Below are positions 4,567 to 42,900 of a stretch of DNA of 64,000 nucleotides, in pieces. The stretch lies in assembly GCA_964234715.1 (NCBI GenBank), contig OZ174278.1; one strand, given 5' to 3'. This stretch comes from Podarcis melisellensis (lineage: Eukaryota). Both the position numbers and the translations under genes were made by a program. The notes under the pieces were generated by a model. The model made no database searches, was not told the DNA's origin, and saw only the letters and a program-made list of their open reading frames with translations. The first letter of the stretch is position 1; each line of letters starts with the position of its first letter.

Positions 4567-7500
4567 CACATGTATTTATAACACTAGCTCCCAGTTTTCA
4601 AACTAGTTTGGCGAGGAGAGGAGATGTTGTGAGAGCAACAAGGTTTGTGTGCAGAAGCTCCAACATTCAGCAGAATCTCAGGTAGTAGCTGCTGTGGAAA
4701 AACTTTGCCCAAGTCCCTAGAGAGTCACTGCCATACTGAGCTAGATGAAGCAATGTTCTGTCTTGATATAAAACAATTTTTTTATGTTGGAGATGAAGGA
4801 TGGGAGCTCAGTGGCAGAGCATGTGAGGTGCATGTAGAAGGTCCTAGATTCAATTCCTGTCACCTCCAGCTTAAAAGATCTCGAGTAGTAAGTCCTAAGT
4901 GCCACTTTCAGAGCTAAATTCAGTAATTATCAGAGCCTATATAAAGGAAGCTTCTTTGGCTGGTGAACCCACATCATGTCTGCAACAGGCTACTTTGATG
5001 GAACAAGAGCAAAACTTGCCTTATATCTGCGGATAGTCAATTTTCTCTTTCTGGTTTCAGTATTTTGCTGAAGCAGAGCATTGCACATCTGGAAAACCTG
5101 CTGCATGACAGCATCCTGTCTCAGGTCATCACGGCCCTTTAAGAGATACAAAAAAGGCAATGGTATAGAAATGGCATCTGCTGAACACTACAACAACTTT
5201 ATGTTATTTATATTTATTTGGAAGTGAGGGAAACTTTTATTCAAAACAAGTATGCAAAGTACTGTAGACTTAAGCAACAGGAAAAGTATCCAGACAATTG
5301 AGCAGTACTGTCACTTTATACTTTGTCTTCTGGGATCACTCAGAAGTTTTGAAATACATTGTACATTTAGTAAATAAGTAAATATATATTTAGAAATGTG
5401 TAAGAACGTATTTCCATGCATTAGGAGCTTATAAATTTCCCACGGTTTTACTTTACAGCAGCTCAGAGAAATAAAACATATCAACTTCCACCAAAGGCAA
5501 GGTTCACACCACAGAACATGGCATAAGTTAAAAACCCAATATTCTACATTCAATTTACAGGTCTCATGGTTTTTAAATCAAAAAAGACACCTCTCTAGCA
5601 CGTGCAACACACAGAACATACCTTGACAAGTTGCCTCCTCTCTTTCCCATCTGATCCAACACAGTCTATTATTTTTGGTAGATTAAGGCCTCCTGCTAAG
5701 CGAAATTCTGGCTTGAATGACCTTATTGTAACCAAATTTTCATACTTCCCACTTGGATCCACCTAAAATCATAAATATATTTAGGCGCTGCTGTATCATG
5801 TTCACCACAATATTACATGTTCACTACAGTACTGATAGCCATTTCTCTGTCTGCTAGAATGAAACATGTGCAGGTTACAGACTCTGCTAACCCAGAAATA
5901 GTACCTTGGGTTAAGAACTTTGCTTCAGGATGAGAACATAAATCTTGCTCCGGCGGTGCGGCAGCAGCGGGAGGCCCCATTAGCTAAAGTGGTACCTCAG
6001 GTTAAGAACAGTTTCAGGTTAAGCACGGACCTCCAGAACGAATTAAGTACTTAACCCGAGGTACCACTGTAATCCCCGCTAATATGACTATGTAAGGATT
6101 ATTACTGAGATAAACCAGTTTCATTTACCTTGATTTCCATGGTGGGTACAACAACATCATCTAGATTCTTTAGCTTGGTGATAGGTTGATCAGAAGGGAT
6201 ATTTATGCCTCCTGCATAAACAACACACAAATTACCTTAAATGCCATTACTAACATTTGTTGCTATAGGAACTCCTGCACACTGGACTTCAAACAATGAT
6301 GAAACTGTTTCTAACATGTCTCTGATATTACAGAAATTATTCTAGATTTTCTAGTGTGGTGCCATCTACCCCTTTGCCTTTCCACTGTGTATCAGACATT
6401 CTCTACTATTTTAACTCTTTTTAATATATCTAATTGTACTATAAATATTACATTGTAAATTGGCCCATGCCCAAATACCAAAATAACCAGAGTACTGCCA
6501 ATTTGCTCTGAGGCAAAGGCTGTTACAGATACCTGCACAAATTGGATACAGTTCACTGGCTAACAAATATCATTACAGTGGTACCTCGGGTTACATACGC
6601 TTTAGATTACAGACTCTGCTAACCCAGAAATTGTACCTCAGGTTAAGAACTTTGCTTCAGGATGATAAAAGAAATCGCACGGCGGCAGTGTGGCGACAGC
6701 CGGAGGCCCCATTAGCTAAAGTGGTGCTTCAGGTTAAGAACAGTTTTAGGTTAAGAATGGACCTCCGGAACGAATTAAGTACTTAACCCGAGGTACCACT
6801 GTATAGCCTATAAATTGCACAGTTAATTTACTTTCAACAAAACATCCTGGAGAAGCAAAACAATATTTTCCAGCTATTTATTACACAGTATGAAACTGAA
6901 GGATTATTGTTGATTTTCAACTCCCACCGCAATTATCCCCATTTTCCATATTCTTACTTCTCTCTGACTTCCAGCGAGTCGCGTCCATGTTTGCTAAAGT
7001 GATATAAGCATTGCAGAGGGCTTCGACATTTGTCACCATATCAGCTCTTTCATGCTTGATGATGTTAATTATATTGCTAGCAGCTTCCATCCGTTCCTAT
7101 CGGTTGAAAAAAGAATACTGGTAAAAGCGAATGTTTTACTTACAATCTGTTGTTGTTTAGTTGTATCCGACTCTTCGTGACCCCATGGACCAGAGCACGC
7201 CAATCTACAATCTACTTTAGATTACAATCTACTTTAGATTAAAACAATTCAGAGCTCTGACAACAAAGGAAGCATTAGGAAACTGGGCCAACTGCTGGTG
7301 GGTAACTTTACTGCAGCCCTGACATTATGAAAAACAGGCCCCAACTACAATACTGTCCATGCAAACACAAGAACCTTGCCGCTCCCCCAGCCTAAAGCAC
7401 CCCAGAAGCAGGTGAATGAAAGTACCTTGTCAAGTTGAGAAGTTTCTTTTGGTGTGTTTTTTGTTTGCCTGCTTCTTGCTTCTTCCGGCTTTGCGAAGAG

Positions 7501-19500: not shown

Positions 19501-22500
19501 TTTCACATTTCACTGCTTTTCATATTTATGTACAAAATATACATAATACAACTGGACCCTTCAATATGAAAATTAAGAATAAAGGTAGTATTCTACTGTT
19601 TTAATATGTTGCGTTTTCTGTGTGATTTCCACTACAGGGACTCTAATTTGTATAGAATTTAAGGGCTAGGCCTAAGCATTGCAGTGATAGCAACAGTGTG
19701 TATAAACAGGGCAGGGAAAACTGTCTCCATCACATATATTCCCTGAATTCTTATTGCTTAATAGCAGCAATAGCTTACAAAACAAGAGGGAGATCTCACC
19801 CCAAATTTCTTTGAACTTAGAATTTCAATTGATGCTGTTATACTGTTGAGGAGCTTACTGAGCTTGGAGAACTAGAACCAGTACTATTTTAAGAAAACAT
19901 TTTGAAAAACCAATACATTCCAGTTTTAGAAATACTCAAATGGCAAGGATTAGTTAGCAATTTAGGAAAGCAGATACTTTTTACAGGAGACAAAGGAAGT
20001 AATGCAAAGATGAAGTATTATTAACTAAATCTTGTTTTTTAAGCTTTAATAAAAGTAATTTTTTAGTAAATAATACTATTTTTAAAAGCTAACAGAGCAA
20101 TATCAGGTTTTTTAAACAGGTTTCTAGGTGCTATCTTTCAACATTCCAGTCAAAATTTCTCTGAAGTTATTTACTGGTATAAAAATATTAAATGTTTATG
20201 TATTTGCAACATAATCTAATTTTTACTAATTCTCTTCAAAAGAACTCTACTCATTTGAATAGCTAAATTTCTTACCCAAGGCTCTATTGGTAGAATTAAC
20301 AGCTGTTTTTGAAAGTTGTAAGAAACACGCTATCAGCTTCACTATTATACAGTCCTTTGGGTTTTCTACAGTTGGGTGTAAAAAGCATTAAAAGCAATAT
20401 TAAGTGAATGAATTATTTATTATGGTCACAGACCAATAAAATTAAATATACAATTAAAATTATATGATTAAAAACAGACATTAAATATACAGATTACACA
20501 TGTAAGATTTACTAATGCTACTAATTTAAACATTTTTCATTTGAAGACTCAACCCCCCCAAAAAAACAAACCCCAACTACCCCACAATATCCATATCAAC
20601 CATGTGTGTAAAGTTGTAACCAAACAAATTAAAAAAATTCTTCTTAAATGCCAGTGCTTTGAAGTACACAGAACCTGATAAAAGGCAAATGAACTTATAT
20701 TTACAGAAACTCACAGGACTTGCTGAACTGCATTTCAAACATCATATTAATTAGTCTTTAGTATGATACGCCAACACTATCCCCAATGACACAAGGCAAA
20801 TCATCAGTGAAAGAGGAAGAGAGGCTCTAGAAAGTAAGGAGATCAGCCAGGGCAGATTTATTTCTATCTTTGCTTTCTCCAATGCTATTTTCTGAAGTGT
20901 GTCGTGAACAAAAAAAAAAAAGGACAGCACTTTTAAAATTGTGGTACCCACTGTGAAATGCATTCTCAATGTTATGTTTCGCCTAGCGCCTTCCTCAACA
21001 TCCTCTAGATAAGAAACAGTTTCTCCCTAATCCTTCGACTGATATTTATTTTTTCTTATTGCATTGTTCATTGTATACAAAACAGAAACTATACTGGTAT
21101 TTGGTTTAGTTCCTGGGTTGTTCATGCATCCATGCTGCCCTCAGGTTAGTCATATCCCCCCCCCCCCGGCAATATGCAGTACTCCCAGGAATTTAAAAAG
21201 CAGTCTCAAACCCATACCGTGAAATTCTTTCATAAGGTCCTTCATTTGTTCTTTATGCTCCTTAAGTTGCTTACGCAAATCATTTAAACCTTCAAGTCTC
21301 GTTAACAGTAGCGAATCAGAGGTATTTATGGACAGAAAATGGTTAATTTCCTGCAAACAACAAACAGAATTTATAGTAAGGATACACACAATTATTAGGT
21401 ACTGTGAATTATGAATTATGGTGCTGGAGGAGACTCTTGAGAGTCCCATGGACTGCAAGAAGATCAAACCTATCCATTATGAAGGAAATCAGCCCTGAGT
21501 GCTCACTGAAAGGACAGATTGTGAAGCTGAGACTCCAATACTTTGGCTACCTCATGAGAAGAGAAGACTCCCTGGAAAAGACCCTGGTGTTGGGAAAGAT
21601 GGAGGGCACAAGGAGAAGGGGACGACAGAGGACGAGATGGTTGGACAGTGTTCTCAAAGCTACCAGCATGAGTTTGACCAAACTACAGGAGGCAGGGGAA
21701 GACAGGAGTGCCTGGCGTGCTCTGGTCCATGGGGTCACGAAGAGTCGGACACGACTAAACCAGTGTTTCCCAACCGGTGTTCCGCGGCACAATAGTGTGC
21801 CGCGAGATGTTGCCTGGTGTGCCGCTCCGGCGGCTCCTCTGCGGCGGCTACAGCGGCAACCTCGGGCGGCTCCTGAGGCGGCGAAGGCGGCCCAGCGGCC
21901 GGAGGCGAAGACGGTTGCGGCTGCTCCCGACGCTCACCAGCGGCCTCCTCTTCCTCGCCGCTGCTGCTTCGCGGCTTCTCCTCCGCCTCCTCCTTCTCCT
22001 CGCCGCCGCCTTTTTCGGGCTCCGGCTCCTTCTTCCCCTCAGGCTCCTCCGCGGAAGGCCCGTCCGGCAGCTCGGCCTCCGAGTCGCTGCTGCCGCCGCC
22101 GCCTCTTTCTCCTCCGCTACCGCCGCCGGGCTCTCCTCCTCCTCCTCCGGGCCCCTCGTCCTGGGCGGGCAGAGCGGCGGGGGTCTCGGCGGCCGCCGGG
22201 CTCTCCTGGGTCTCCTGCATGGGGGGCTACGCGGCCTTCCTGCTCGCCTCACACGCGCGGCGCACGAACAGGCAAGGCGGCGCGCTGGGCCGAAAAGGGG
22301 GAGGGAGGGGGCACAGAGCGCGCAGGCGCGCGCGCAGGGGAGGCGCCCTCTTGCCGGGCTATGTGCGCGAGAGCGGACCCGGTGGCGAGTCTCGCGAGAG
22401 GGGCAGGGACCAACTCGGCAGACGAGAGGGGGAAGGAACGGATTCCAAAACCGGTGTCTTGCCGCGTTGTATATGTTAATTTCCTATGTTAATGGGCTAG

Positions 22501-25500
22501 GACAGGGTTTGCGATCGGTTAACGCCCAGTTATGCTTTCCCCCTAGGAATTAGGCGTTTCGGTCTTGAGGTACGCTCGCTTCACACCCCACTTGGAGGTT
22601 CCCCGGCAAGGGGGAGGGAAAAAATTTGAAAGTTACACTTTCGTGCGTCCCTCCCGGCGTGACGCTGCGCGCTGACGTCACGGGGCTGTAATGGTGGTGT
22701 GCCTCGAGATTTTTTTCATCAAACAAGTGTGCCTTTGCCAAAAAAAGGTTGGGAAACACTGGACTAAACAACAACAAATTATCTTTTAAAAAATGTAGAG
22801 ACTCTGAATGGCTGAGTAGTGTGTCAATTCTTATCTGGAAATTAACATCACTAAGATCAATGAGACTTACTCATGACTAGATATGAATAGAAAGACCTAA
22901 CCCACTATGATTTCAAAGGCTTGAAAAGTGATTGTATTACCTCCAGGAGAGAAAATCCACCATTACTGTATTTTATTTTCTGCTGAACAGCACGCAGGTC
23001 TTTAAAAGCAGGGTGATCTGGAAAAGGATCCAGATGTTTGATTGCCTGGTATAGGTTTTCATTGTCTTTGTTATCTATCACTAGATATTTTAATAAGCCC
23101 AAGACCTAAACGAAAAGGAAAACAAAAGTGGAGGAACAAAGTAATGAAACCACTCTAGAAAGTCTTCACGTTTTTGCATGGAAAAACAGCAGTCACAATA
23201 CTCTGATCCACAATCTGCAGACTAGCTGCTCAGCAGTTACTTCCCTCAATGCTTGTGCATTTTCTTTCCTTACTGCACAGAAACCCATACCCAAACAGAA
23301 GATCCTGCACTTATTTGAATGCAAAATACTCCCCACTTCCATCCACTCCTTTGACGCTGAGCCTGTTTATCAGGCTCAATGGCCAATGTCAGGGAAGACC
23401 CTATATTTAAACTATAATCCCAAACTGGTTTATTAGGCAATAAGGCCCACTGAAGACAATAGGACTTACTTCTGAGCAACCATACCAAGGACTGTGCTGT
23501 TAATTCCTCAGTTCCCATGTGCATTTCAATATGCTATGGGCACAACAGAGGAAAGAGTGAAGATGATGTGCACGAGCCCAAGGCCTGCTTTTGACTTCAC
23601 GGTGCATAAAGCAGAAAGGCAGAAGTAGGATATAAATATCCACAGTGGCCACATGTGCACATCACAGTAAGACAGGGTTGCTGGCTTACTGTGATTTAAA
23701 GGAAATGAACAGCATGCTAGTGCATGCTGTCTGACCACTCCTACTTTACTCTTTTAAATGTAGATGTTAGTGACAAAAGGTTATGTATGGACCTTCTAAG
23801 ACTGAATGCAAACTAACTATTCTGACATCCCAAATTCCTCTATATACTATGTACGGCCTTTCACAGCCTGCAGCTTTTACATTGAAATATATCAGCTGGC
23901 TGCAAAAAAAAATAGCAAAACTATTTAACAGAATTTTATAACATTAGTAATATAATTATATGCAGCAGATTAGCGTAACACATATCAGTTCTTGCCTTTA
24001 AATATATCTAAATGCAAATACTGCAGCCCACAGCTCACAGATTTAATGACACAGACACGCTAAGACTCATAATTAAGATGAGCAAGCATAGAGCCCTGAT
24101 TGTATAATTTACTTCTTCACTGGCAAGCATTTTGAGCATAATTATCCATATTCGCCTAAAAAGAAAAAAAGAAGCATTTAAATAATGCAGATAGTTAAGT
24201 TGTTCAGCTTTCCTACCAATTAAGTAGACATTTAAGGCAATTTAAGGCAGACATTTAGTTAAGCTTGGGAAAGAAACAGGAATTCATCCCTGATCTTACA
24301 CTGAGTGTCTGAGATGCAGCACAGGTCAAGGACAAGATCTTACTCCTTGCAGAGGAGTGAGGAAGAGAACTGGTGACCAAAATTTGTGGGCATACACATG
24401 TAATGGCAATGGGATCCAAAAAACTGTGCAATTAATTGTGCACTTCTTAAAACAGCAGCTACTAAACCTCAAGATTTTGAGATTGAAGGGATCTCAGAAA
24501 TTTGGAATATTGCCTGGGGCTTTCAAAATACTCTTGTGCATACCTTATTACAGTAATCCTGCAACTTACACACACACAGTTAACTTGTGTGTATTCAGCT
24601 TTAGGTGATTGGGATTTTTTTAAAGAGGTAAAAAGAGTGGGCATCCGGGGGGGGGGGGGACTTCAGCAATCTCACCTGCTATTGCTCCCTACGTTGTTTT
24701 GACTATATACAGTTACACGGTTTTTGTTCCATGCACTATCCTTGGAACATAACCCCTGAATAAGTTGTGGGTTTCAGTAATTGCCTTTTAAAACTGTTAC
24801 TAATTGATTCTTGCATTTATATTGTTCGCTTCATTAGGTGTTCTCAGGTGGAAAGGCGGAGTACACATATTCTAAACTGACCCAAGTAAACCTAAATCAA
24901 GCAAACATAAAATGCCTAGCAAGTGCAGCTGATTAAAACTTACTTCTTCTTGGGTTTCAGGTTGTTCTCCAACTATGGGAATCAGGGTCCCCACAACAAC
25001 ATGGAGGTGACTCCCTAGGGCATCTCCACAATATATTACTGCTGTGTGGCAAACACGACTGAGAAGGTCACAACATAGCAAGAAGCTCCGGAGGGATATC
25101 CCTTTGAGAGGAACAGGCCTAAAACACATTTTAAAAAATGAAGCAGCTTAGGGGAGCTACGATACACACTTTAATCAACACAGTATAACCAGACAAGGTG
25201 GTGATGTACAAATGATTTTTACAACAGGAGAAATTGTCCTACGCTCCCCTGTCTTCCCACTTCCCTCTCCCTCAAATGAAAGCAATGCCACTTTTTCTCA
25301 GGATGTTGAGGAACCATTAGTGAGCACTCTTTGAGTCTGCTCAGCCAACCAGCTAAAAATCCACCTAACAGTTACCTCATCCAGCCCACATTTTACCAGC
25401 TTCTCCACAAGAATATCATGGATGCAGTGTATCTTGATTTCACTAAGGCTTTTGAAAAAATTCCTCACGATATCATTGAAGGTCTTTCTTTGAAAGCTTA

Positions 25501-28500
25501 ATACTTTAAACCACCAATCAAGTTCATGGCTTACTGGTATTGGACAAGGTTCAATCTCCATTTATAGGAATCTTGAACAGTAAGGCCTGAGCTTGAGCTC
25601 TTTAAATACCAGTCACAGCTGATAGCCATAGACAAGATGGGCTGTACCAGGGTAAGGCAACTCCATAAATGCTGTGATGCCCAATCCCAGTTACTGAAGT
25701 ATTTTCACACCGGACATGTGTATAAATAATAGTACATAATACTCATACCTGTTGCTGATGTGGTAAATTGTAGTATAAATCACATCCCGGAGTACAAAAG
25801 CCCATGCTCCTCCTAAACCATCCTTTATTTTTTCCAGTAATAGTTGAACAAAAAAATGATATATCATAATAATTCTATGTTTTTTGTATATATTATTTGT
25901 TTCAGATGCTTGCTTACATATGGCAAATAAGATTTTTTGGAATGACTCCTGCAGAAAAAAAAGATAGGACATTAGATAGTAATCTCTGGGGATTTTCTGT
26001 TTTACATTGTCTGGAATTACCGTATTTTTCGCACCATAGGGCGAACCGGACCATAGGGCGCACCCAATTTTGGGGGGGGGAAATAAAGGGGGAAAAATAT
26101 TTTTCCCCAAGGCGCGGGGCTGGGGTGGGGGAAGCTCGAGCTTCCCCCGACCCCAGCCCCCAAACAGGCAAGTCTCCGCAAGCAGCGGGAGCGCTCCCGC
26201 TGCTTGCGGAGAGGTCCACGAAGCCTGGGCGCGCTGAGCTCAGCGCGCGCAGGCTTCAGCGTGCAGGCAACTCTCCGCAAGCAGCGGGAGCGCTCCCATT
26301 GCTTGTGGAAAGGTCCGCGAAGCCTGGGCACGCTGAGCTCAGCGTGCGCAGGCTTCAGCGTGCAGGCAAGTCTCCGCAAGCAGCGGGAGCCCAACGCTGG
26401 GCTCCCGCTGCTTGCGGAGAGGTGTGCGAAGCCTGGAGAGCGTGAGGGGTCGGTGCGCACCGACCCCTCTCACTCTCCAGGCTTCAGCGAAAGCCTGCAT
26501 TCGCACCATAGGACGCACACACATTTCCCCTTCATTTTCGGAGGGGAAAAAGTGTGTCCTATGGTGCGAAAAATACAGTAGATCTGATGATTAAAAAGAA
26601 AAATGACAGCCAGCTATCTAATTCTACCCTTCCCTCCCTTGCCCCCAACATCTTATCCCTGTCCTGAAGTCATGATGTCATGCATTTCCCCACCCCCTAA
26701 CATTACAGGCGAACATTTAAGGGAGACAAGGAAATGAACCATATTGTGACATTAGGGTGAACTAGCTGGCATTACAGAAGAGGAAGGAGCAAACAGACAG
26801 GATATTGCAGATTTATTACAGTGGACGATGAAGTCTTCGGATTGGGCTAATAAATCTACTATTCAAGTAAGACCAGTAGTTCTTTTTTAAGCAGCACCTG
26901 CATCTAGGTCAATACACAATGTGTGTCACAAAACTGAAATCAGTTACTTACAGGTTGCTTGGAAAGAATTGCTACAAGACCTTTTGACATTGCTTTATGA
27001 CAACTGCTGATGTAACCCAATGTTGCTTTGATGACTCGTGATGGAAAATGAGGAGGATTAGGAGTGGGATCCAGATCCCTGAAAAAAAATAAATGCAAGC
27101 CTTTCAAAGCCTTGATGAGTCCCCAAACAAAAATTTCTGCGAAAAGAAATATGAACAGATTGGACTGAAATACTGATTCATTTCTCTGTCACTTTCTCCC
27201 AGGGTATGCTTGTCAAAGAAATGCTCTGCCATTCCAGATTTTGGTGCCCCCATCTTGCGCAAGTTGGTCACATCTGCCCCATTTAGTAAAGGGAAATTGA
27301 GGGCCAGCAAGGTTTGCCCACATTTGAAACCTGCGTATATTGAAGCCTATATTGTCAGGAAACAAAGAAGAAGATCATTGGATTACAAATCTGCGAAAGG
27401 AGAGAAAGATAAAGGAAGAAGCCCCTGGAGTATCTGGAATACTGGAATTTAAAGGAACAAATAAATATGACTGGGACTTCTTCTTCAAGTTTGAGCATGG
27501 GAGACCAGCTGATCCTTGGCAGCAACTGTTTCTAACTGATTTGGAGGGAAGAAAATATGAGGTGCTTGTGATAGAACTCCTTCGAAACTTGAGGGCCAAC
27601 AAAAAGGATTACCAACAAAACCGACGGAGAGAGGCTAACAGAGACTTAAGGGCCTCAGATGTGAGGAATCCGGGCTAGGAATTGTTTTTTGAGGACATTG
27701 GTTTGGGAAGGGACAGAAACTGGGGTAGAGAGGGAGGGGGAGAGCAGAATTGTAAAAATTTATGACTTTTGTATTTGGTTATTATGATTTTTGGTTTAAT
27801 ATAAAAAGGGAGAAATTCGTGGAAGAGAACTTAGGTCGACCTTAGAAAAAGGATTTAATGTGTATAAGAAAACTGGATAAGTAAAATTTGGCCTAGTAAA
27901 AAGAGTTAAGCTTAAAAATTACAACAATATTTTAAGGATGAGGGAAAAGAACTTGCTGAGTTAATTAATGAAATTGGGATGTAGGAAGGGGGGGTGGGGG
28001 GAAGTCAAGGAAAGAAGGTAAAGAAAGTAAGGGTATGAAATTATACATGTTTTGTCTTTGTCTTTCTATGTGTGTGTATGTCTATATAAAATGTGAAAAC
28101 CCAATAAAAATTTTATAAAAAAAAGAAAAGAAAAAAAAGAAATACTGATTCATTTCTCAGCTGGGAGGAAACAAACTAACTTATACAGGGTGAGTCCTTT
28201 AAAAGAGGCCCCGTGGATACAGAGTACACATGTCCCACGGGGCCTCTTTTAAAAAACTCATGCTGTATTTAAATAGGTGTTTTAATATTACCTATTCTAT
28301 ATCTTATATTCTATATTAAGATATATTCTATATCTGAGACTCCAATATTTTGGCCACTTCATGAGAAGAGAAGACTCCCTGGAAAAGACCCTGATGTTGG
28401 GAAAGATGGAGGGCACAAGGAGAAGGGGACGACAGAGGACGAGATGGTTGGACAGTGTTCTCGAAGCTACCAGCATGAGTTTGACCAAACTGTGGGAGGC

Positions 28501-36900: not shown

Positions 36901-39900
36901 GCTGAGAACTATATTGTAGACCAAACTAAGTTGTTCTCTATTCCTAACCTGGGCAGCTACATAGAGAGTAAAGGAATTCTAAAGCAGTTATACCAGCAAC
37001 CGGGTCAAAAAGGAAGCTGCAGTATCAGCATTTGCTAAAGCATGAGCACATCGTGCAAGTCTGGTAGGGCTAGGAAACTTAGTGTTTAATACCAGCCTTG
37101 ACACAGATTGTGTGTCTTTGAGAAAAAGACAAATTCTGTCTTAGTTGTCTGTGTACTGTGATTACATTGGAAGGGCAGGGTTTAAGTTCTTCCCCAGTCA
37201 CCTCTATATTCTGAAAAAAAAAATCAGTCAGCACATTTAGAAAAACAACAACTTTGAAGGTGGCTTTTGAACTTCTGGTGTATTTCTAGAGGAAGTCTGG
37301 TGTATTTCTAGAGGAAGGCAATTAAAATACAGGAACACACACACACACACACACATTTCCACATTACCTGCCACTTCTATGTTTGCAGTGATGCACACAA
37401 GCAAAGTTGCACAGGCTTTGAACATGTGTAAAATGGTTGTTGGAATGGTACCCTCAAAAACTTTTTAAACCATTTAGTTATCACAAAACGATACAGAAAG
37501 CAATTTAAAGATACCTGTCAAAGTTTGCAGCTCTCCACCCTCATTTACATCACCAGCTTCAGCAGAGTGATCATCAAAAAGATCTGACGTGGTCGGATTT
37601 TCTCCTTCCATCCTACTCTCTTCTGGATCATCTTCCATTAAATCCACTTCTCCAGCTTCACTTATCCTCCCAGTAGAAAACATCTAAGAGAAGTTATTTA
37701 TTTGGAATTCTTTCATCACATCTTTCTTACAATAAACTCAAGATACTTTATGAAAAAAAGCTTAAAATTATCTTAACTGAGAGTTCTGTGTACGTTTCAG
37801 TATATAAAAACTGTACCACCTGTATACAAACCAGAAAAATGTGACTTCTGATTGCTTCGTTAAATGTGGCATCACTTTCCTGTGGAAGACCACTGTTTGA
37901 TACTGCTTAGTATGGGACTGGGACTTTTACTGAGGACCTCCATTTCACTTTGTAATTTAAGTAAAACAGTGAGACAAAACTCACAGCTGAGGAGTCCAGA
38001 TTGACCTCAACTGGCAGAGAAATTTATTCGAGAGAAATACTCCCTCGGCTACACAAATCTCAAGCTATTCAGAGATTAGAGATCCACACCAATGTCCCTA
38101 ACTGATCCAGAAACCCACTGTACAGTATTATCCTTAATGTGAGAGTTGCAGTCATGGAAGATAATGGACAATATCACATTTGTCAAACCTAATGGTATAC
38201 AACACTCATTCAGCCTTAATTTCTACTGTCTCTTTAGAAGAAATAGAGAGATTCAAGCGATAACCCCAAGATGGTGCAGCTTAGCCAGAAGGGAGCATAG
38301 CAGTGCAGCACTAGCAGTGGCTTGGCCCCCACCATTACCAACAAGGGTGCTAAATGTAGGGTAGAGTTGAAAGAGAGGAAGATAAACTAGCAAGGGGAAA
38401 GAGAAACAGCAGAGAAAGTAAGTGTGAAGCAGGATACATGCAATACTGGTGTTTAATGTTGGAGCGGGTGGAGCATTGCATTGTACACAGAGCAAATTGT
38501 TTTGGCTATATTTTTCACTCTCAATAGGCATAAGAAAAGGTCAAACCCAACATGTTTTGTCTGTCTTTCAAGTGAAATATCTGCTTACGTTATACACTTT
38601 TTGTTGTCCAAAATAAACTGTGATGAGGAAGTCATGCCATACACTATAACTACTCACCAGATGTTTGCAAATGTCTACAAGATCATTCATCAGTTTTGAG
38701 GTTAACAAATGCAAGAAAATTCCAGACAGGATCTTTCTTGGGCTGTTCTGTCAAAACAAACACAATATATACGAATTATTGAACACATCCCCCAAAACAG
38801 GATTTAATCACACAAGAATCCCTCTAGAGGGGATTCACGGACATTACAAGATGGAACTAGGTCGGGAAATATGAGCTGAGCTGCAAGAACTGGTCGTTCT
38901 CATGGGAAAGCTGCGAGAGATGTATGAGCAAGGTCATGTTTAGTCTACAAGCCCTCCAAAGTCGAAACCAATAGAAAATATAGCTACTGAGATGGAAAAG
39001 GGCCTGATACTCAAAACACGGGCAGCTGGACAAGAAATGAAACCAAAGAAGGAAGAGGAGGAAAAGATACCTGTTAAACAAGGGGTGGCCGAAATGATAC
39101 AGAAGACAAATGAGAGCCAAAGATCTATCAAGATGATCTTAAACCCGACCAGAGTGAAAGTTGGACCAGTTGGGATGTATGAACTTAAGAAACAAAGATG
39201 GAGCTTCACCTTTAAACAACCTGTCCTGGCTGAAAAAATCACTGACAGTATTGAGAAAGTATTTTTGCGAGTTTGGGCATTTAATATAAAAGATTTCCAA
39301 AGAAGCCGGCTGAGAGGGACTGAAAGGGACTTGAGAGCCTCGGACGTAAGGTCACCAGGCTAAAAAGATAGACTTATGGATTGTGGTCTGGGGTTGAAAC
39401 CGGGGATGGAAAAGGAGGGTTTGGGAGCCCGAAGGGGGCCTGATTTTCACTATGCAGTGCAAAAATCCTGGGTTTTTTTACGTCATTTATTATTATTAAA
39501 ATGGGGAATTCGTGGATGGGAACTAGGGACAACCTTAGGAAAAGTACTTTTATTTTTGTTTTCTTTTGTTTTCTTTTTTATTTCTCTTATATATGAATAA
39601 GGTATATAACTTAAGTGTTATTGATTAAACCAAAGTAAATATAATACTGAAATAATGGTTAAAATATGTAAAGATACTAAGATAAAAACTTGCTGAACAA
39701 ATATGCGAAGCGGAATACAAGAAGGGGAGGCGTGGGGAAGTCAAGAAAAGAAGTTACTGAAAATGAGATTTAAAAGGTGGAATTTCTGTGTTTTTTTCTC
39801 TTTTTTTGTTCTTTGTTGTGTTTGTTTTGTTTTCTTGGATGTTGTGTGTTTCTTATGTTTTTAGTTTTACTATTTGTACCTTTTAGAATAAATATTATTT

Positions 39901-42900
39901 AAAAAACAAAAAAAAAACAGGATTTAATCACTTTAACTAGGCATGGAAACATAACCAATCACTTTAAAACTAAGTAAAATTAGCTACTGCTGTATTCATT
40001 TGAAACTGAACTAATAAAAATTCTGTGTGCATGCATACACCTGTACATGATTACAAATTATTAAATTGACTGGAGAAATAGGTTTGCTGCAAAAGGGACC
40101 TAACTAGCTAAAAGTACAAGGATTTCAGCATTTCTTAATTGTGGCATGGACTGAAAGATCGGCAAGTGTCTTACCTGCTTACAATTACATGCGCAACTAA
40201 TACACTGTCCTATTAACGTCCTTAATGAAACGATCCTAGAATCTTCATTTAGCTTGTTTTTGGACTGATAAATAGTTTCTCCCACATAATGAATAAGAGA
40301 CTGTGCAAATTAAAAAAAAAATGCAAATAATTAAGAAACTGTCTCAGATATATATTGCTTTTATAGCATTCCATCCACATTCAAGTCTAATCATGCTAAA
40401 GAAACTTTCAGCTTTTTCTAACGCAATCAACCATACAAAGATGAGTAACTTTGTCTTTACTAACATTTCCTGATATTATTTATTTTCCTATTCCGTATAT
40501 TTCTCACTTTTTTCACAAAAGTGCCTCAAAGCTACTTATAATGTAAAAATAAGCATTAATCAACTTGTAAAATAAGTGACAAGGAACATAAATGTAAAAA
40601 ATAAAAAGATATGCTTCCACCACTGTTAAGATATTTCTCTTGCTTGGAAACCAGAAATTTAGTGTATTCCTTAAAACACAAAAAAGCCTTACCTTGGATT
40701 TTTGAAACAGCTTTGATTTGCGTGCTTCTTCTTCCGTCAGTATGCCAGCATAGCAGTAGCAGCCAAGAACACCAGTCAGGAGGCTGACACAACGTACTAG
40801 GATTATTGCAGATGCAACCTTCAAGTCAAACACAAAAATACATGCTAAGCATTTGATGATACTTCATCCATAGTTATTAATACTTCTATAAAGTTCAGAA
40901 TACAGTGGTACCTCAGGTTACAAACACTTCGGGTTACAGACTCCACTAACCCAGAAGTAGTACCTCAGGTTAAGAACTTTGCCCCAGGATGAGAACAAAA
41001 ATCGTGTGGCGGCGGCACAGGAGGCCCCATTAGCTAAAGTGGTACCTCAGGTTAAGAACAGTTTCAGGTTAAGAACGGACCTCTGGAACGAATTAAGTTC
41101 GTAACTAGAGGTACCACTGTACCTTCATGAATTGTAAGATGCTAAGAAGAAGCTGGTAAACAGAGCGTACTTACTCTGCCTATGTGTGATTTTAGACTCA
41201 CAAGGACAGAGCAACCCTACCTGACAGGGAGCAGTGGGGCAGAGTGACCACAGCATCTGAGGCCCTGCCACTTCTGCTGGCCAAGGCAGAAGGTGGGGTT
41301 GAAGTTTTTTGTGGTAGCTCCAGGCCGCTGCAGCTGATGACCAAAATTCATGCTGCTTGGGAGCTCCAAGGCCACTGGCACCCCATCCCAAATTGTCCCA
41401 TTTTAGGGTTTTCTGCTGGCTATCACCAGCAACAGCTTCCCACCTGCCAGGGCAAAGATGTTGCCCCAGAGGTGCTCTTCTGAGCTGATTCAGGCACAGA
41501 AAGAAACTTACGCCATCCAAGAGCAGAAAAGAGGAACTCCTCCCACTTCATTGCAGCAGCACACCCACCCATGCCATCTTTAGATGAATGTCACGTAGTA
41601 TGAGCCACCAGGGAAGGCTGGTCCATCAACAGGCATGGGGCACTGTCCCACTAACCTCAGCTTGCCCTCAGCCAGACCCCACCTGCCCACCTTCTTAATT
41701 ACAATCAGTCCAGGGAGTGGCATCGCCTATCAACTTTCTTATTCCTGGTCTCTGTTTCCGCTCCTAAAAATCACAGGGAGGATAGGGACAAAACTGGGGA
41801 TAGGCTTTGCCTGTCCTTGGCTCTGACTCTCCATAATGTTGGGTCTCCCTGCCTTCTGTCCTACCATTCCCAATGGGCACCAGCCACCTTAGCAAGCCAC
41901 CATTTGTCTGTTTTATTAATTATGTGACGTATATCAAAAGCTGCTCACAAATATTCTTGAGAAGGATGTACTTTGAGAGACCTTTCTTTTCCAACTTACC
42001 TCAGGCATAAAGTTACTCAGAAGTTGTTCTGATATCTCCAACAAGTTCTGTTCTAAAGCTTCTCTGTGTTTTTGACTGACTGTTAATCTGGAACTGAGCA
42101 ATTTGCTTTCAGGTGTATCATTTGCCACATTTGTAAAAATGCCTATTTCATCGAAAGTTGTTTGCATGTAGAATGTTTCAATTTCTGAACGGCTGGCTTC
42201 TTCTGTGTCTTGTGCATGTTGTGTACTTAAAAAAAAATGACAAATATTATCTGTCACTGGTATTTCATGACAGTATTTGAAGCCTTTAAAACCAAACACG
42301 GAATAATTAAAACTTTAATTTTATTTGATTTCCAAAATATTCTAATAGATGAGTTGAAACCAAAGGCCTGTCTTCATATAATGAACATCTGTACCCCTGT
42401 CTAATGAATTATGAACAGTCTCCCCTTTCCCACTGAATGTACAACCAGCTCTATTCATCTCTTGAAGAGCAGGAAGATAAGGCACCATAAACCCAGCAGC
42501 AACAACACAGCCTTATGCAAAAACTGTACCTCTTTGAAGAGAGGCAGTAATACATACACAGGTTTCTGAGGAGAGTGCTAAGAATTCCTCCTGCCATTTA
42601 CATGTTACATGTGCAGTGAGGGCAATCCATGTATAGAAACCTACTTCACAGACAGATGGTTTTTAACTGTATAAGGCAGCATTGGGGAATATCAGCCCAG
42701 GAGCCACATGCAGTCTTCAGGAAGCTTAAGCTATCATGACTGTATTTAACGAAAGCAGGAAACAAGCTGGATTTGGGGAGCAGCCTACTTCCCAAGTGTT
42801 CGTTACTGCCTTTGACCAGTTGGTTGAGCCAAAACCCAACCTACCAACCCTGCTAACCAAAGGGAAATCGTAGCCTAATGTACTACGGTAAGAGCCACAT

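What the first reader, a model, noticed from the sequence alone, without database searches (positions are those of the whole stretch)
27187..28138. Unidentified protein-coding retroposon family: two divergent copies share a C-terminus conserved through synonymous changes
Seen: copy A (27187-28138) and copy B (38812-39913) both have long TSDs (20 and 18 bp), AATAAA plus an A tail, and shared 3' UTR islands (AATTCGTGGA, AACTTGCTGA, GGGGAAGTCAAG), but are otherwise quite divergent. Their ORFs end in [12 protein letters not shown] and [12 protein letters not shown]. Over these 12 codons, 11 residues are identical, 7 codons differ only synonymously (aga/agg, tta/ttg, agg/aga, tca/tcg, gat/gac, gtg/gta, ccg/cca) and the stop differs (tag/taa). 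WxFxFK and NxKD(Y/F)QxxRxR motifs are also shared upstream. Established: long TSDs and poly(A) indicate L1-type target-primed insertion, but L1 ORF2 ends in a CCHC/Trp-rich domain that is absent here, and no RT motif is visible. Inference: the source elements encode a protein under purifying selection that is not a recognisable ORF2, either a non-autonomous coding retroposon or an extra 3' ORF of a squamate L1-clade LINE.
Basis: partly seen in the sequence, partly recalled or inferred. Interest (0 to 1): 0.85.

Follow-up and report, generated by a model that had tools for sequence, protein, structure and literature searches.

The report
Lizard half-L1 retroposon, short derived ORF1
The two sequences are dead, 5'-truncated copies of a roughly 1.8-2 kb wall-lizard jumping element that keeps the head and tail of an L1 but has no reverse-transcriptase gene and carries one small, selectively maintained protein gene, so it is a lizard counterpart of the mammalian "half-L1" parasites of L1.

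Summary
In detail: both copies have exact target-site duplications (20 and 18 bp), AATAAA plus an A tail, shared 3'UTR islands, and ORFs ending RDLRASDVR(N/S)PG with 7 synonymous and 1 replacement change in the last 12 codons.

It is a real family. All relatives found are 129-215 aa proteins with the same C-terminus; the named ones come from Podarcis lilfordi, the rest from unnamed public read assemblies. None is long or carries RT.

A full-length copy with its own TSD is 1.79 kb: 815-bp 5'UTR, one ORF, about 380-bp 3'UTR, no ORF2. The first ~450 bp of the 5'UTR and most of the 3'UTR match Podarcis L1 elements.

One basal family member has an N-terminus homologous to L1 ORF1p (E 1e-8). The conserved C-terminal half matches nothing.

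Between subfamilies dN/dS is about 0.36-0.57; for a close pair it is about 0.9.

Verdict: an L1-derived, ORF2-less, L1-mobilised retroposon, HAL1-like, whose ORF is a shortened and strongly diverged ORF1 derivative.

This scan's first readers flagged what appear to be the same family as complete 1.8-1.96 kb copies elsewhere in this genome. Interest is moderate.

The parts
27167..27186 (+). Copy A, 5' target-site duplication (20 nt)
   Evidence: Exact repeat of 28139-28158.
27187..27342 (+). Copy A, about 156 bp of unrelated sequence inside the TSDs, 5' of the family homology
   Evidence: No blastn or tblastn match to any family member or L1 locus. A template-switch chimera is possible but unexplained.
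27343..27678 (+). Copy A, 5'-truncated ORF: the C-terminal ~112 codons, open, stop TAG at 27676-27678
   Evidence: ORF 27340-27678. Aligns from about codon 83 of P0019 and P0020. DNA matches L004, L005 and L003e2 at 68-73%.
27679..28102 (+). Copy A, L1-type 3'UTR with the three conserved islands
   Evidence: blastn to the 3'UTR of the internally deleted L1 at L003:1349-3486, E 1e-13. The last ~150 bp is 73-81% identical to two Podarcis L1 3'UTRs.
28103..28138 (+). Copy A, AATAAA signal (28103-28108) and A-rich tail
   Evidence: Read directly.
28139..28158 (+). Copy A, 3' target-site duplication
38794..38811 (+). Copy B, 5' target-site duplication (18 nt)
   Evidence: Exact repeat of 39914-39931.
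38812..38850 (+). Copy B, last 39 nt of the 5'UTR, including the palindrome CCCTCTAGAGGG (38820-38831)
   Evidence: Copy B aligns to L001:621-1278 at 92.6%. L001 carries a further 620 bp of 5'UTR upstream, so copy B is 5'-truncated.
38851..39363 (+). Copy B, complete-length ORF (170 codons) disabled by two in-frame stops (38872-38874, 38941-38943)
   Evidence: Frame translation. 84% identical to the intact 170-aa P0001.
39364..39886 (+). Copy B, L1-type 3'UTR
   Evidence: blastn of B 776-1102 against the deleted-L1 3'UTR, E 8e-25; alignment.
39887..39913 (+). Copy B, AATAAA and A tail
   Evidence: Read.
39914..39931 (+). Copy B, 3' target-site duplication

Best explanation
Copies A and B are dead, 5'-truncated insertions from two divergent subfamilies of a lacertid (wall-lizard) non-autonomous retroposon derived from L1. 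A full-length element is about 1.8-2.0 kb. It has an ~800-bp 5'UTR whose first ~450 bp is an L1 5'UTR starting GACTTCCGGG..TAATGGCGG, one ORF of 170-215 codons in the position of ORF1, a 380-540-bp L1 3'UTR, AATAAA and a poly(A) tail. It has no ORF2.

Shown here: the architecture, the L1 identity of both UTRs, the absence of EN/RT, the L1-type insertion marks (15-20 bp TSDs that begin A-rich), the many divergent subfamilies, and dN/dS below 1 between subfamilies.

Supported through a chain of homology: the ORF descends from L1 ORF1. Its N-terminal long helix corresponds to the start of the ORF1p coiled coil. The RRM/CTD part is not recognisable, and a family-specific basic C-terminus (..[26 protein letters not shown]) has become the most conserved part.

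Inferred mechanism, by analogy with mammalian HAL1 and with L1 cis-preference: the element is transcribed from its L1-like internal promoter. Its small protein oligomerises through the N-terminal helix and binds its own RNA in cis through the basic C-terminal segment. The polyadenylated RNP then borrows ORF2p from autonomous L1s for target-primed reverse transcription. Frequent 5' truncation yields copies like A and B.
For: Family and size. An exhaustive profile search of 1.84 billion proteins gave 10 hits, all 129-215 aa and all ending in the same C-terminus. Named sources are hypothetical proteins of Podarcis lilfordi.

Full-length architecture. L003:4931-6720 is 1.79 kb, has a 14-nt TSD with one mismatch, and holds a single ORF. 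L001 and L002 show 660-810 bp of 5'UTR upstream of the ATG.

L1 identity of the UTRs. L003:1349-3486 is an internally deleted L1. Its ORF fuses an ORF1 N-terminus (63% to P0025, E 1e-54) to an ORF2 C-terminus (49% to L010:13571-14164, E 6e-36). That L010 ORF2 piece in turn matches human LINE-1 ORF2p residues 1093-1226 at E 1e-9. P0025 residues 188-319 match human ORF2p 752-882 at E 4e-15. This L1 shares its first ~470 bp with every family 5'UTR (64-67% identity, E 1e-22 to 1e-47), shares ~900 bp with L009e1 (E 1e-104), and shares its 3'UTR with copies A and B (E 1e-13 and 8e-25).

ORF1 link. The L009e1 N-terminus matches L1 ORF1p (P0025 residues 56-135) at 36% identity, E 1e-8. The C-terminal ~100 aa of L009e1 match family proteins P0010 and P0011 at E 3e-9 and 2.5e-7. 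A family N-terminal HMM scores L009e1 above all 500 shuffles, and scores the L1 ORF1 N-termini at p about 0.03-0.06.

Selection. NG86 dN/dS is 0.36-0.57 between subfamilies over the whole ORF and typically about 0.3 over the last 36 codons. It is 0.9 for the close pair B/L001, as expected for post-insertion decay.

Structure. Two AlphaFold runs agree on a confident N-terminal helix of ~50 residues (pLDDT 75-87), with the rest at low confidence.
Against: Direct profile comparisons of the main family with L1 ORF1 N-termini are not significant (hhalign E 0.08-0.3), so ORF1 ancestry of the main family rests on one bridging copy. The C-terminal half matches nothing: not the one complete lizard ORF1p RRM/CTD available, not the ORF2 C-terminus in any frame, not Pfam and not PDB. 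These negatives are weak, because a genuine lizard ORF1p piece is also missed by Pfam and PDB. YN00 gives higher dN/dS values (0.4-1.2), so constraint on the whole ORF is modest. No full-length L1 of the matching lineage was available to map the deletion breakpoints.
Confidence: 0.72

Rival explanations
1. The L1 UTRs are only a vehicle. The ORF, or at least its conserved C-terminal two thirds, is not ORF1-derived: it was captured from elsewhere or arose de novo or by overprinting between the L1 head and tail, and it now serves the element or the host in a way unrelated to ORF1p.
For: The C-terminal half has no detectable similarity to lizard ORF1p, to ORF2p in any frame, to Pfam or to PDB. 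hhalign of the main family against ORF1 N-termini is not significant. No RRM-like fold is predicted.
Against: L009e1 joins an ORF1p-like N-terminus (E 1e-8) to the family C-terminus within one ORF. The ATG lies at the ORF1 position. The three-way alignments keep one register. Sequence tools also miss a true lizard ORF1p piece.
Confidence: 0.18
2. These are processed pseudogenes of a cellular, possibly L1-derived domesticated gene (in the manner of L1TD1), rather than copies of a self-propagating retroposon.
For: The ORF is under purifying selection. Podarcis annotations list members as proteins.
Against: Every copy that reaches the 5' end (L003e2, L009e1, L009e2) starts at the same L1-type 5' terminus. 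There are many deeply divergent subfamilies, each with its own UTRs. There are two copies in this 64-kb window, and adjacent copies occur in P. lilfordi. No intron-bearing parent was seen.
Confidence: 0.05
3. It is an extra 3' ORF of an autonomous L1-clade LINE, and copies A and B are ordinary 5'-truncated LINE tails.
For: Both window copies are 5'-truncated, so on their own they cannot exclude an upstream ORF2.
Against: The full-length 1.79-kb copy with a TSD has no room for ORF2. In L001, L002 and L007 the 5'UTR abuts the ORF. Podarcis L1 ORF2 ends ..DWKKFKDYLAKYCNIK and is followed directly by the 3'UTR. No long protein carries the C-terminus.
Confidence: 0.02
4. The ORF is not translated or functional, and its conservation reflects RNA-level constraint or sampling of intact ORFs from databases.
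For: The protein databases list only open ORFs, which is an ascertainment bias. Most of the protein is predicted to be disordered. YN00 dN/dS approaches 1 for some pairs.
Against: Synonymous changes far exceed replacements at the C-terminus across subfamilies whose dS is near saturation. The reading frame and length are kept across subfamilies with about 30% identity. The genomic copies seen here that are not pre-selected for open frames (window copy B, L003e2, L009e1) carry stops or frameshifts, while frames stay open across lineages.
Confidence: 0.03

Closest known systems
HAL1 (half-L1) non-autonomous L1 derivatives of mammals (Smit 1999; Bao & Jurka 2010, as cited in PMC5753468)
   Same: Both are L1-derived elements that keep L1 UTRs, carry a single ORF at the ORF1 position, lack ORF2, and insert with a poly(A) tail and long TSDs, presumably using L1 ORF2p in trans. 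HAL1s are already known to have arisen several times independently.
   Different: The host is a squamate lineage and the parent is a lacertid L1, so the origin is independent of mammalian HAL1. The ORF is only 170-215 aa, against about 300 or more for ORF1p. It has no recognisable RRM or CTD. Its best-conserved part is a family-specific basic C-terminus that was not found in any L1 protein available here.
Autonomous Podarcis L1 (ORF1p plus ORF2p)
   Same: They share the 5' terminus and the first ~450 bp of the 5'UTR, the 3'UTR islands, AATAAA and poly(A), and the TSD length. In the bridging copy L009e1 the start of the ORF also matches the start of the ORF1p coiled coil.
   Different: The family has no EN/RT ORF and is about 1.8-2 kb rather than about 6 kb. 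The second half of its 5'UTR and most of its ORF are family-specific.
Internally deleted L1s (for example L003:1349-3486 and P. raffonei LOC128406054, P0025)
   Same: They are short L1 derivatives with L1 UTRs and one fused ORF.
   Different: Their ORFs are plain in-frame ORF1-N/ORF2-C fusions that are easily recognised as L1. No subfamily structure or family-specific conserved protein segment was seen for them.
L1-mobilised SINEs and SVA-type composite retroposons
   Same: They are also non-autonomous, polyadenylated and dependent on L1 ORF2p.
   Different: Those elements are non-coding and have pol III or composite heads. This family is coding and has an L1 5'UTR.

Membership tests
HAL1-like (ORF1-only L1 derivative) | 5' and 3' UTRs derived from L1 | tested here: met
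   blastn to the internally deleted L1 L003:1349-3486: 5'UTR E 1e-22 to 1e-104, 3'UTR E 1e-13 and 8e-25. The L1 identity of that element is anchored to human ORF2p.
HAL1-like (ORF1-only L1 derivative) | No ORF2 (EN/RT) in full-length copies | tested here: met
   A 1.79-kb full-length copy with a TSD and one ORF. All homologous proteins are 215 aa or shorter. No RT or EN Pfam hit in 21 members.
HAL1-like (ORF1-only L1 derivative) | The single ORF is homologous to L1 ORF1p (coiled coil, RRM, CTD) | tested here: inconclusive
   N-terminus: L009e1 against L1 ORF1p gives E 1e-8; the main family is linked only through L009e1 and direct hhalign is not significant. RRM/CTD: no similarity found, but the control lizard ORF1p piece is also missed by Pfam and PDB.
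HAL1-like (ORF1-only L1 derivative) | L1-type insertion marks: poly(A), AATAAA, 10-20 bp TSD, A-rich start of the TSD | tested here: met
   Copies A and B and L003e2. The TSDs start AAATAC, AAAACA and AACTGT.
HAL1-like (ORF1-only L1 derivative) | Mobilised in trans by L1 ORF2p | not testable with these tools
   Inferred from the L1 3'UTR, the poly(A) tail and the TSDs. It needs a retrotransposition assay.
Autonomous L1 LINE | Encodes an APE endonuclease and reverse transcriptase (ORF2) | tested here: not met
Processed pseudogene of a host gene | An intron-containing parent gene exists, and copies start at the mRNA 5' end rather than at a transposon terminus | tested here: not met
   Three independent copies start at the same L1-type terminus GACTTCCGGG. 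No parent gene was found, but no genome-wide search was possible.
SINE | Head derived from a pol III transcript (tRNA, 7SL, 5S) | tested here: not met
   No Rfam match in 27000-28300 apart from two weak matches well below their gathering scores, at the 3' edge and flank of copy A. The full-length 5' end is an L1 5'UTR.

The most novel reading that the evidence does not exclude
The small protein is not just a decayed ORF1p. It is a new kind of retroposon RNP or adaptor protein: an ORF1-type oligomerising helix joined to a novel, strongly conserved basic C-terminal motif ([12 protein letters not shown]). That motif evolved in the parasite to bind its own RNA, or to dock onto L1 ORF2p or a host factor. 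This would let an RRM-less element compete with its L1 parent for the replicase across many co-existing subfamilies.
Probability: 0.25. Interest if true: 0.7.

Novelty: new variant of a known kind. Interest (0 to 1): 0.45.

Why it matters
HAL1-type elements are the only well-described protein-coding parasites of L1, and as far as the library searched here shows they are described from mammals. A diversified lizard family would be an independent origin of the same strategy. It also retains a selectively maintained ORF that has lost the recognisable RNA-binding domains of ORF1p. That offers a natural experiment on which parts of ORF1p a hitch-hiker on ORF2p actually needs, and on how L1 cis-preference is subverted. 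Practically, Podarcis genome annotations currently list these ORFs, and internally deleted L1s, as hypothetical or uncharacterised genes; they should be masked as repeats.

Tried and rejected
- **Pfam on both window ORFs and 21 family members:** no credible hit.
- **PDB sequence search with the family profile:** nothing relevant.
- **ESM Atlas feature search:** no usable hit.
- **hhalign of the family against L1 ORF1 N-termini and against a lizard ORF1p RRM/CTD piece:** not significant.
- **Idea that the conserved C-terminus is out-of-frame ORF2 C-terminal coding sequence:** a MAFFT alignment suggested it. tblastn in all frames, an nhmmer profile of the stop region against shuffles and a protein HMM against shuffles do not support it. 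In one search one wrongly framed row was included in the HMM; the result was null either way.
- **Idea that the 5' 156 bp of copy A is an inverted or duplicated piece of the element:** only a 19-nt match, reached by 1 of 300 shuffles. Left unexplained.
- **Complex prediction, three copies of residues 1-60:** no verdict, because a control scored nearly as high. This is not evidence either way.
- **Two AlphaFold models:** mean pLDDT 49 and 43. Too poor for a fold search, so none was run.
- **Read laying on 38400-40300:** The later script that cut out copy B's 3' end stopped at 39886. Scripts that read the whole window file used it only as a local BLAST subject.
- **Literature searches for a lizard HAL1-like element:** none found. 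Bao & Jurka 2010 is not held.
- **Consensus or repaired sequences:** none were built.
Full report
**Observation**

Copy A (27187-28138) is bracketed by an exact 20-nt direct repeat at 27167-27186 and 28139-28158. Copy B (38812-39913) is bracketed by an exact 18-nt repeat at 38794-38811 and 39914-39931. Both end in AATAAA plus an A-rich tail.

The ORFs 27340-27678 and 38992-39363 end [12 protein letters not shown] and [12 protein letters not shown]. The last 12 codons differ by 7 synonymous changes and 1 replacement. Within the window the two peptides match at 37% identity over 83 aa (E about 1e-6), and two 3'UTR stretches match at 74-79%.

**A real protein family, always short**

A profile of the two peptides, scored against 1.84 billion representative proteins, gave 10 hits. 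All are 129-215 aa and all end at the same C-terminus. No long protein and no RT-bearing protein was hit.

The word-indexed searches added a 170-aa protein 84% identical to copy B (P0001) and further members. The only named sources are hypothetical proteins of Podarcis lilfordi; the rest come from ~1-kb contigs of public read assemblies whose organisms are not named.

The alignments show three parts: a conserved N-terminal segment (MAADGKLQAEIERMFFLVGxLQ..), a variable acidic middle, and a conserved basic C-terminus (..[34 protein letters not shown]).

P0001 shows that copy B's ORF starts at ATG 38851 and has two in-frame stops. Copy A retains only about the last 112 codons. Family homology in A starts near 27343, and the 156 bp before it, though inside the TSDs, match nothing.

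**Full-length architecture**

- Contigs L001 and L002 carry 660-810 bp of non-coding sequence upstream of the ATG, with conserved blocks shared between subfamilies whose proteins are only about 30% identical.
- In the P. lilfordi chromosome, L003:4931-6720 is a complete element of 1.79 kb. It is flanked by a 14-nt TSD with one mismatch and consists of an 815-bp 5'UTR, the ORF (decayed), a ~380-bp 3'UTR and poly(A). There is no room for ORF2.
- L009 holds two further copies head to tail.
- The three copies that reach the 5' end (L003e2, L009e1, L009e2) start at the same terminus, (G)ACTTCCGGG..TAATGGCGGA.

**The UTRs are L1 UTRs**

L003:1349-3486 has the same 5' terminus and a poly(A) tail, but its ORF reads as an L1 ORF1 N-terminus (..LKEKQTNLRIRV) fused to an L1 ORF2 C-terminus (HLWWTCPRIK..). 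L1 identity is anchored by tools as follows:

- That ORF matches P0025 (P. raffonei LOC128406054) at 63% identity, E 1e-54.
- It matches the ORF2 C-terminal ORF L010:13571-14164 at 49% identity, E 6e-36.
- The L010 ORF2 piece matches human LINE-1 ORF2p residues 1093-1226 at E 1e-9.
- P0025 residues 188-319 match human ORF2p 752-882 at E 4e-15.
- A second L1 in L010 shows ORF1 followed by an Exo_endo_phos start.

This deleted L1 shares sequence with the family as follows:

- Its first ~470 bp match every family 5'UTR at 64-67% identity, E 1e-22 to 1e-47.
- About 900 bp match L009e1, E 1e-104.
- Its 3'UTR matches copies A and B, E 1e-13 and 8e-25.

Over the last 150-200 bp, family tails are as similar to the two L1 tails (73-83%) as the A-type and B-type tails are to each other (77%). 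Podarcis L1 ORF2 ends ..DWKKFKDYLAKYCNIK, not with the family motif.

**Origin of the ORF**

L009e1 is the bridge between the family and L1.

- Its N-terminus (MYSEALVRAFCKTSALLEQLHEKTD..) matches L1 ORF1p (P0025 residues 56-135) at 36% identity, E 1e-8. The match starts one codon from an internal Met of ORF1.
- Its C-terminal ~100 residues, in a shifted frame and ending GRDLRASDIRLPG*, match family proteins P0010 and P0011 at E 3e-9 and 2.5e-7.
- An HMM of the family N-termini scores L009e1 above all 500 shuffles. It scores the two L1 ORF1 N-termini of that lineage only marginally (14/500 and 29/500 shuffles reach them).
- hhalign is not significant but keeps the same register.

I conclude that the ORF starts as ORF1. 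This is well supported for L009e1 and moderately supported for the main family.

The C-terminal half has no detectable relative in lizard ORF1p RRM/CTD, in ORF2p in any frame, in Pfam or in PDB. These negatives are weak, because a genuine lizard ORF1p RRM+CTD piece is also invisible to Pfam and PDB. No full-length L1 of the matching lineage was available.

Two AlphaFold runs agree only on a ~50-residue N-terminal helix (pLDDT 75-87). The rest is low confidence. Hydrophobic residues recur every three to four positions over about five heptads of that helix; this is my reading of the sequence, not a tool result.

**Selection**

| Comparison | NG86 dN/dS |
|---|---|
| Between subfamilies, whole ORF | 0.36-0.57 |
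| Last 36 codons | about 0.1-0.7, typically about 0.3 |
| Close pair B vs L001 | 0.9 |

The close-pair value is what neutral decay after insertion predicts. YN00 gives higher values (0.4-1.2), so constraint on the whole ORF is modest and is concentrated at the two ends.

**Mechanism**

This is inference by analogy with HAL1 and with L1 cis-preference. The element is transcribed from the L1-type 5'UTR. The small protein oligomerises through its helix and coats its own RNA through the basic C-terminus. ORF2p from autonomous L1s is recruited at the poly(A) tail. Target-primed reverse transcription gives A-rich-starting TSDs (AAATAC, AAAACA, AACTGT) and frequent 5' truncation.

The scan's earlier follow-up reports an intact L1 in this wall-lizard genome (s1-489268), so a driver is plausible.

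**Comparison and novelty**

The closest known kind is HAL1, the ORF1-only L1 derivative of mammals, which arose several times (PMC5753468). This family meets the architectural criteria (L1 UTRs, no ORF2, L1-type insertion). It differs in host, in its independent origin from lacertid L1, and in an ORF that is much shorter than ORF1p, lacks a recognisable RRM/CTD and has its own conserved C-terminus.

I found no paper describing it; Repbase and Dfam could not be consulted. I rate it a new variant of a known kind.

First readers of this scan flagged what appear to be complete copies of the same family elsewhere in this genome (s1-489287, s1-489288, s1-498199, s1-498183). Those are unchecked notes. 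Their ~1.8-1.96 kb single-ORF description agrees with what I verified independently in P. lilfordi.

**Limits**

- The run search showed only that runs of 'organism A' hold copy B (55-82% of its words), while 'organism B' holds about 16%.
- The trimer prediction gave no verdict.

Noticed in passing
window 27187-27342: About 156 bp at the 5' end of copy A lie inside the 20-nt TSDs but are unrelated to the family or to any L1 sequence fetched. This could be a template-switch chimera or a captured fragment. A 19-nt match to the ORF (27294-27310 against 27586-27602) is borderline.
   Followed up: partly
window 28183-28268: A 34-nt inverted repeat (88% complementary, 18-nt loop) lies immediately 3' of copy A's TSD. 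It gives only a weak, sub-threshold Rfam mir-1263 match and is probably a MITE-like hairpin.
   Followed up: no
L009:1500-4508 (P. lilfordi OX395126.1): Two family elements lie head to tail. The second starts about 60 bp after the stop codon of the first, which is the basal L1-like member L009e1. The second is itself cut off at about 4508.
   Followed up: partly
L003:1349-3486; L010:8001-9693 (P0025, P. raffonei LOC128406054): These are internally deleted L1s whose ORF1 N-terminus is fused in frame to ORF2 pieces. One of them is annotated by NCBI as a spliced protein-coding gene.
   Followed up: partly
window 38820-38831; L001:~631-643; L002:~775-787; L003:~5716-5728: A palindrome CCCTCTAGAGGG (or a near variant) is conserved about 20 nt upstream of the family start codon across subfamilies. 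A weaker version is present in the deleted L1 5'UTR. It could be a regulatory or structural RNA element.
   Followed up: no
L010:17132-17533: A genuine lizard L1 ORF1p RRM+CTD segment gets no Pfam hit (including the L1 ORF1p family) and no human or mouse ORF1p hit in PDB at E<=1. Standard sequence tools therefore cannot rule ORF1p ancestry in or out for squamate sequences.
   Followed up: yes
window 21761-22761: An earlier first-reader note (s1-504995) describes a Pack-type hAT with a captured EIF3B-like promoter and exon, 5 kb upstream of copy A. I did not examine it.
   Followed up: no
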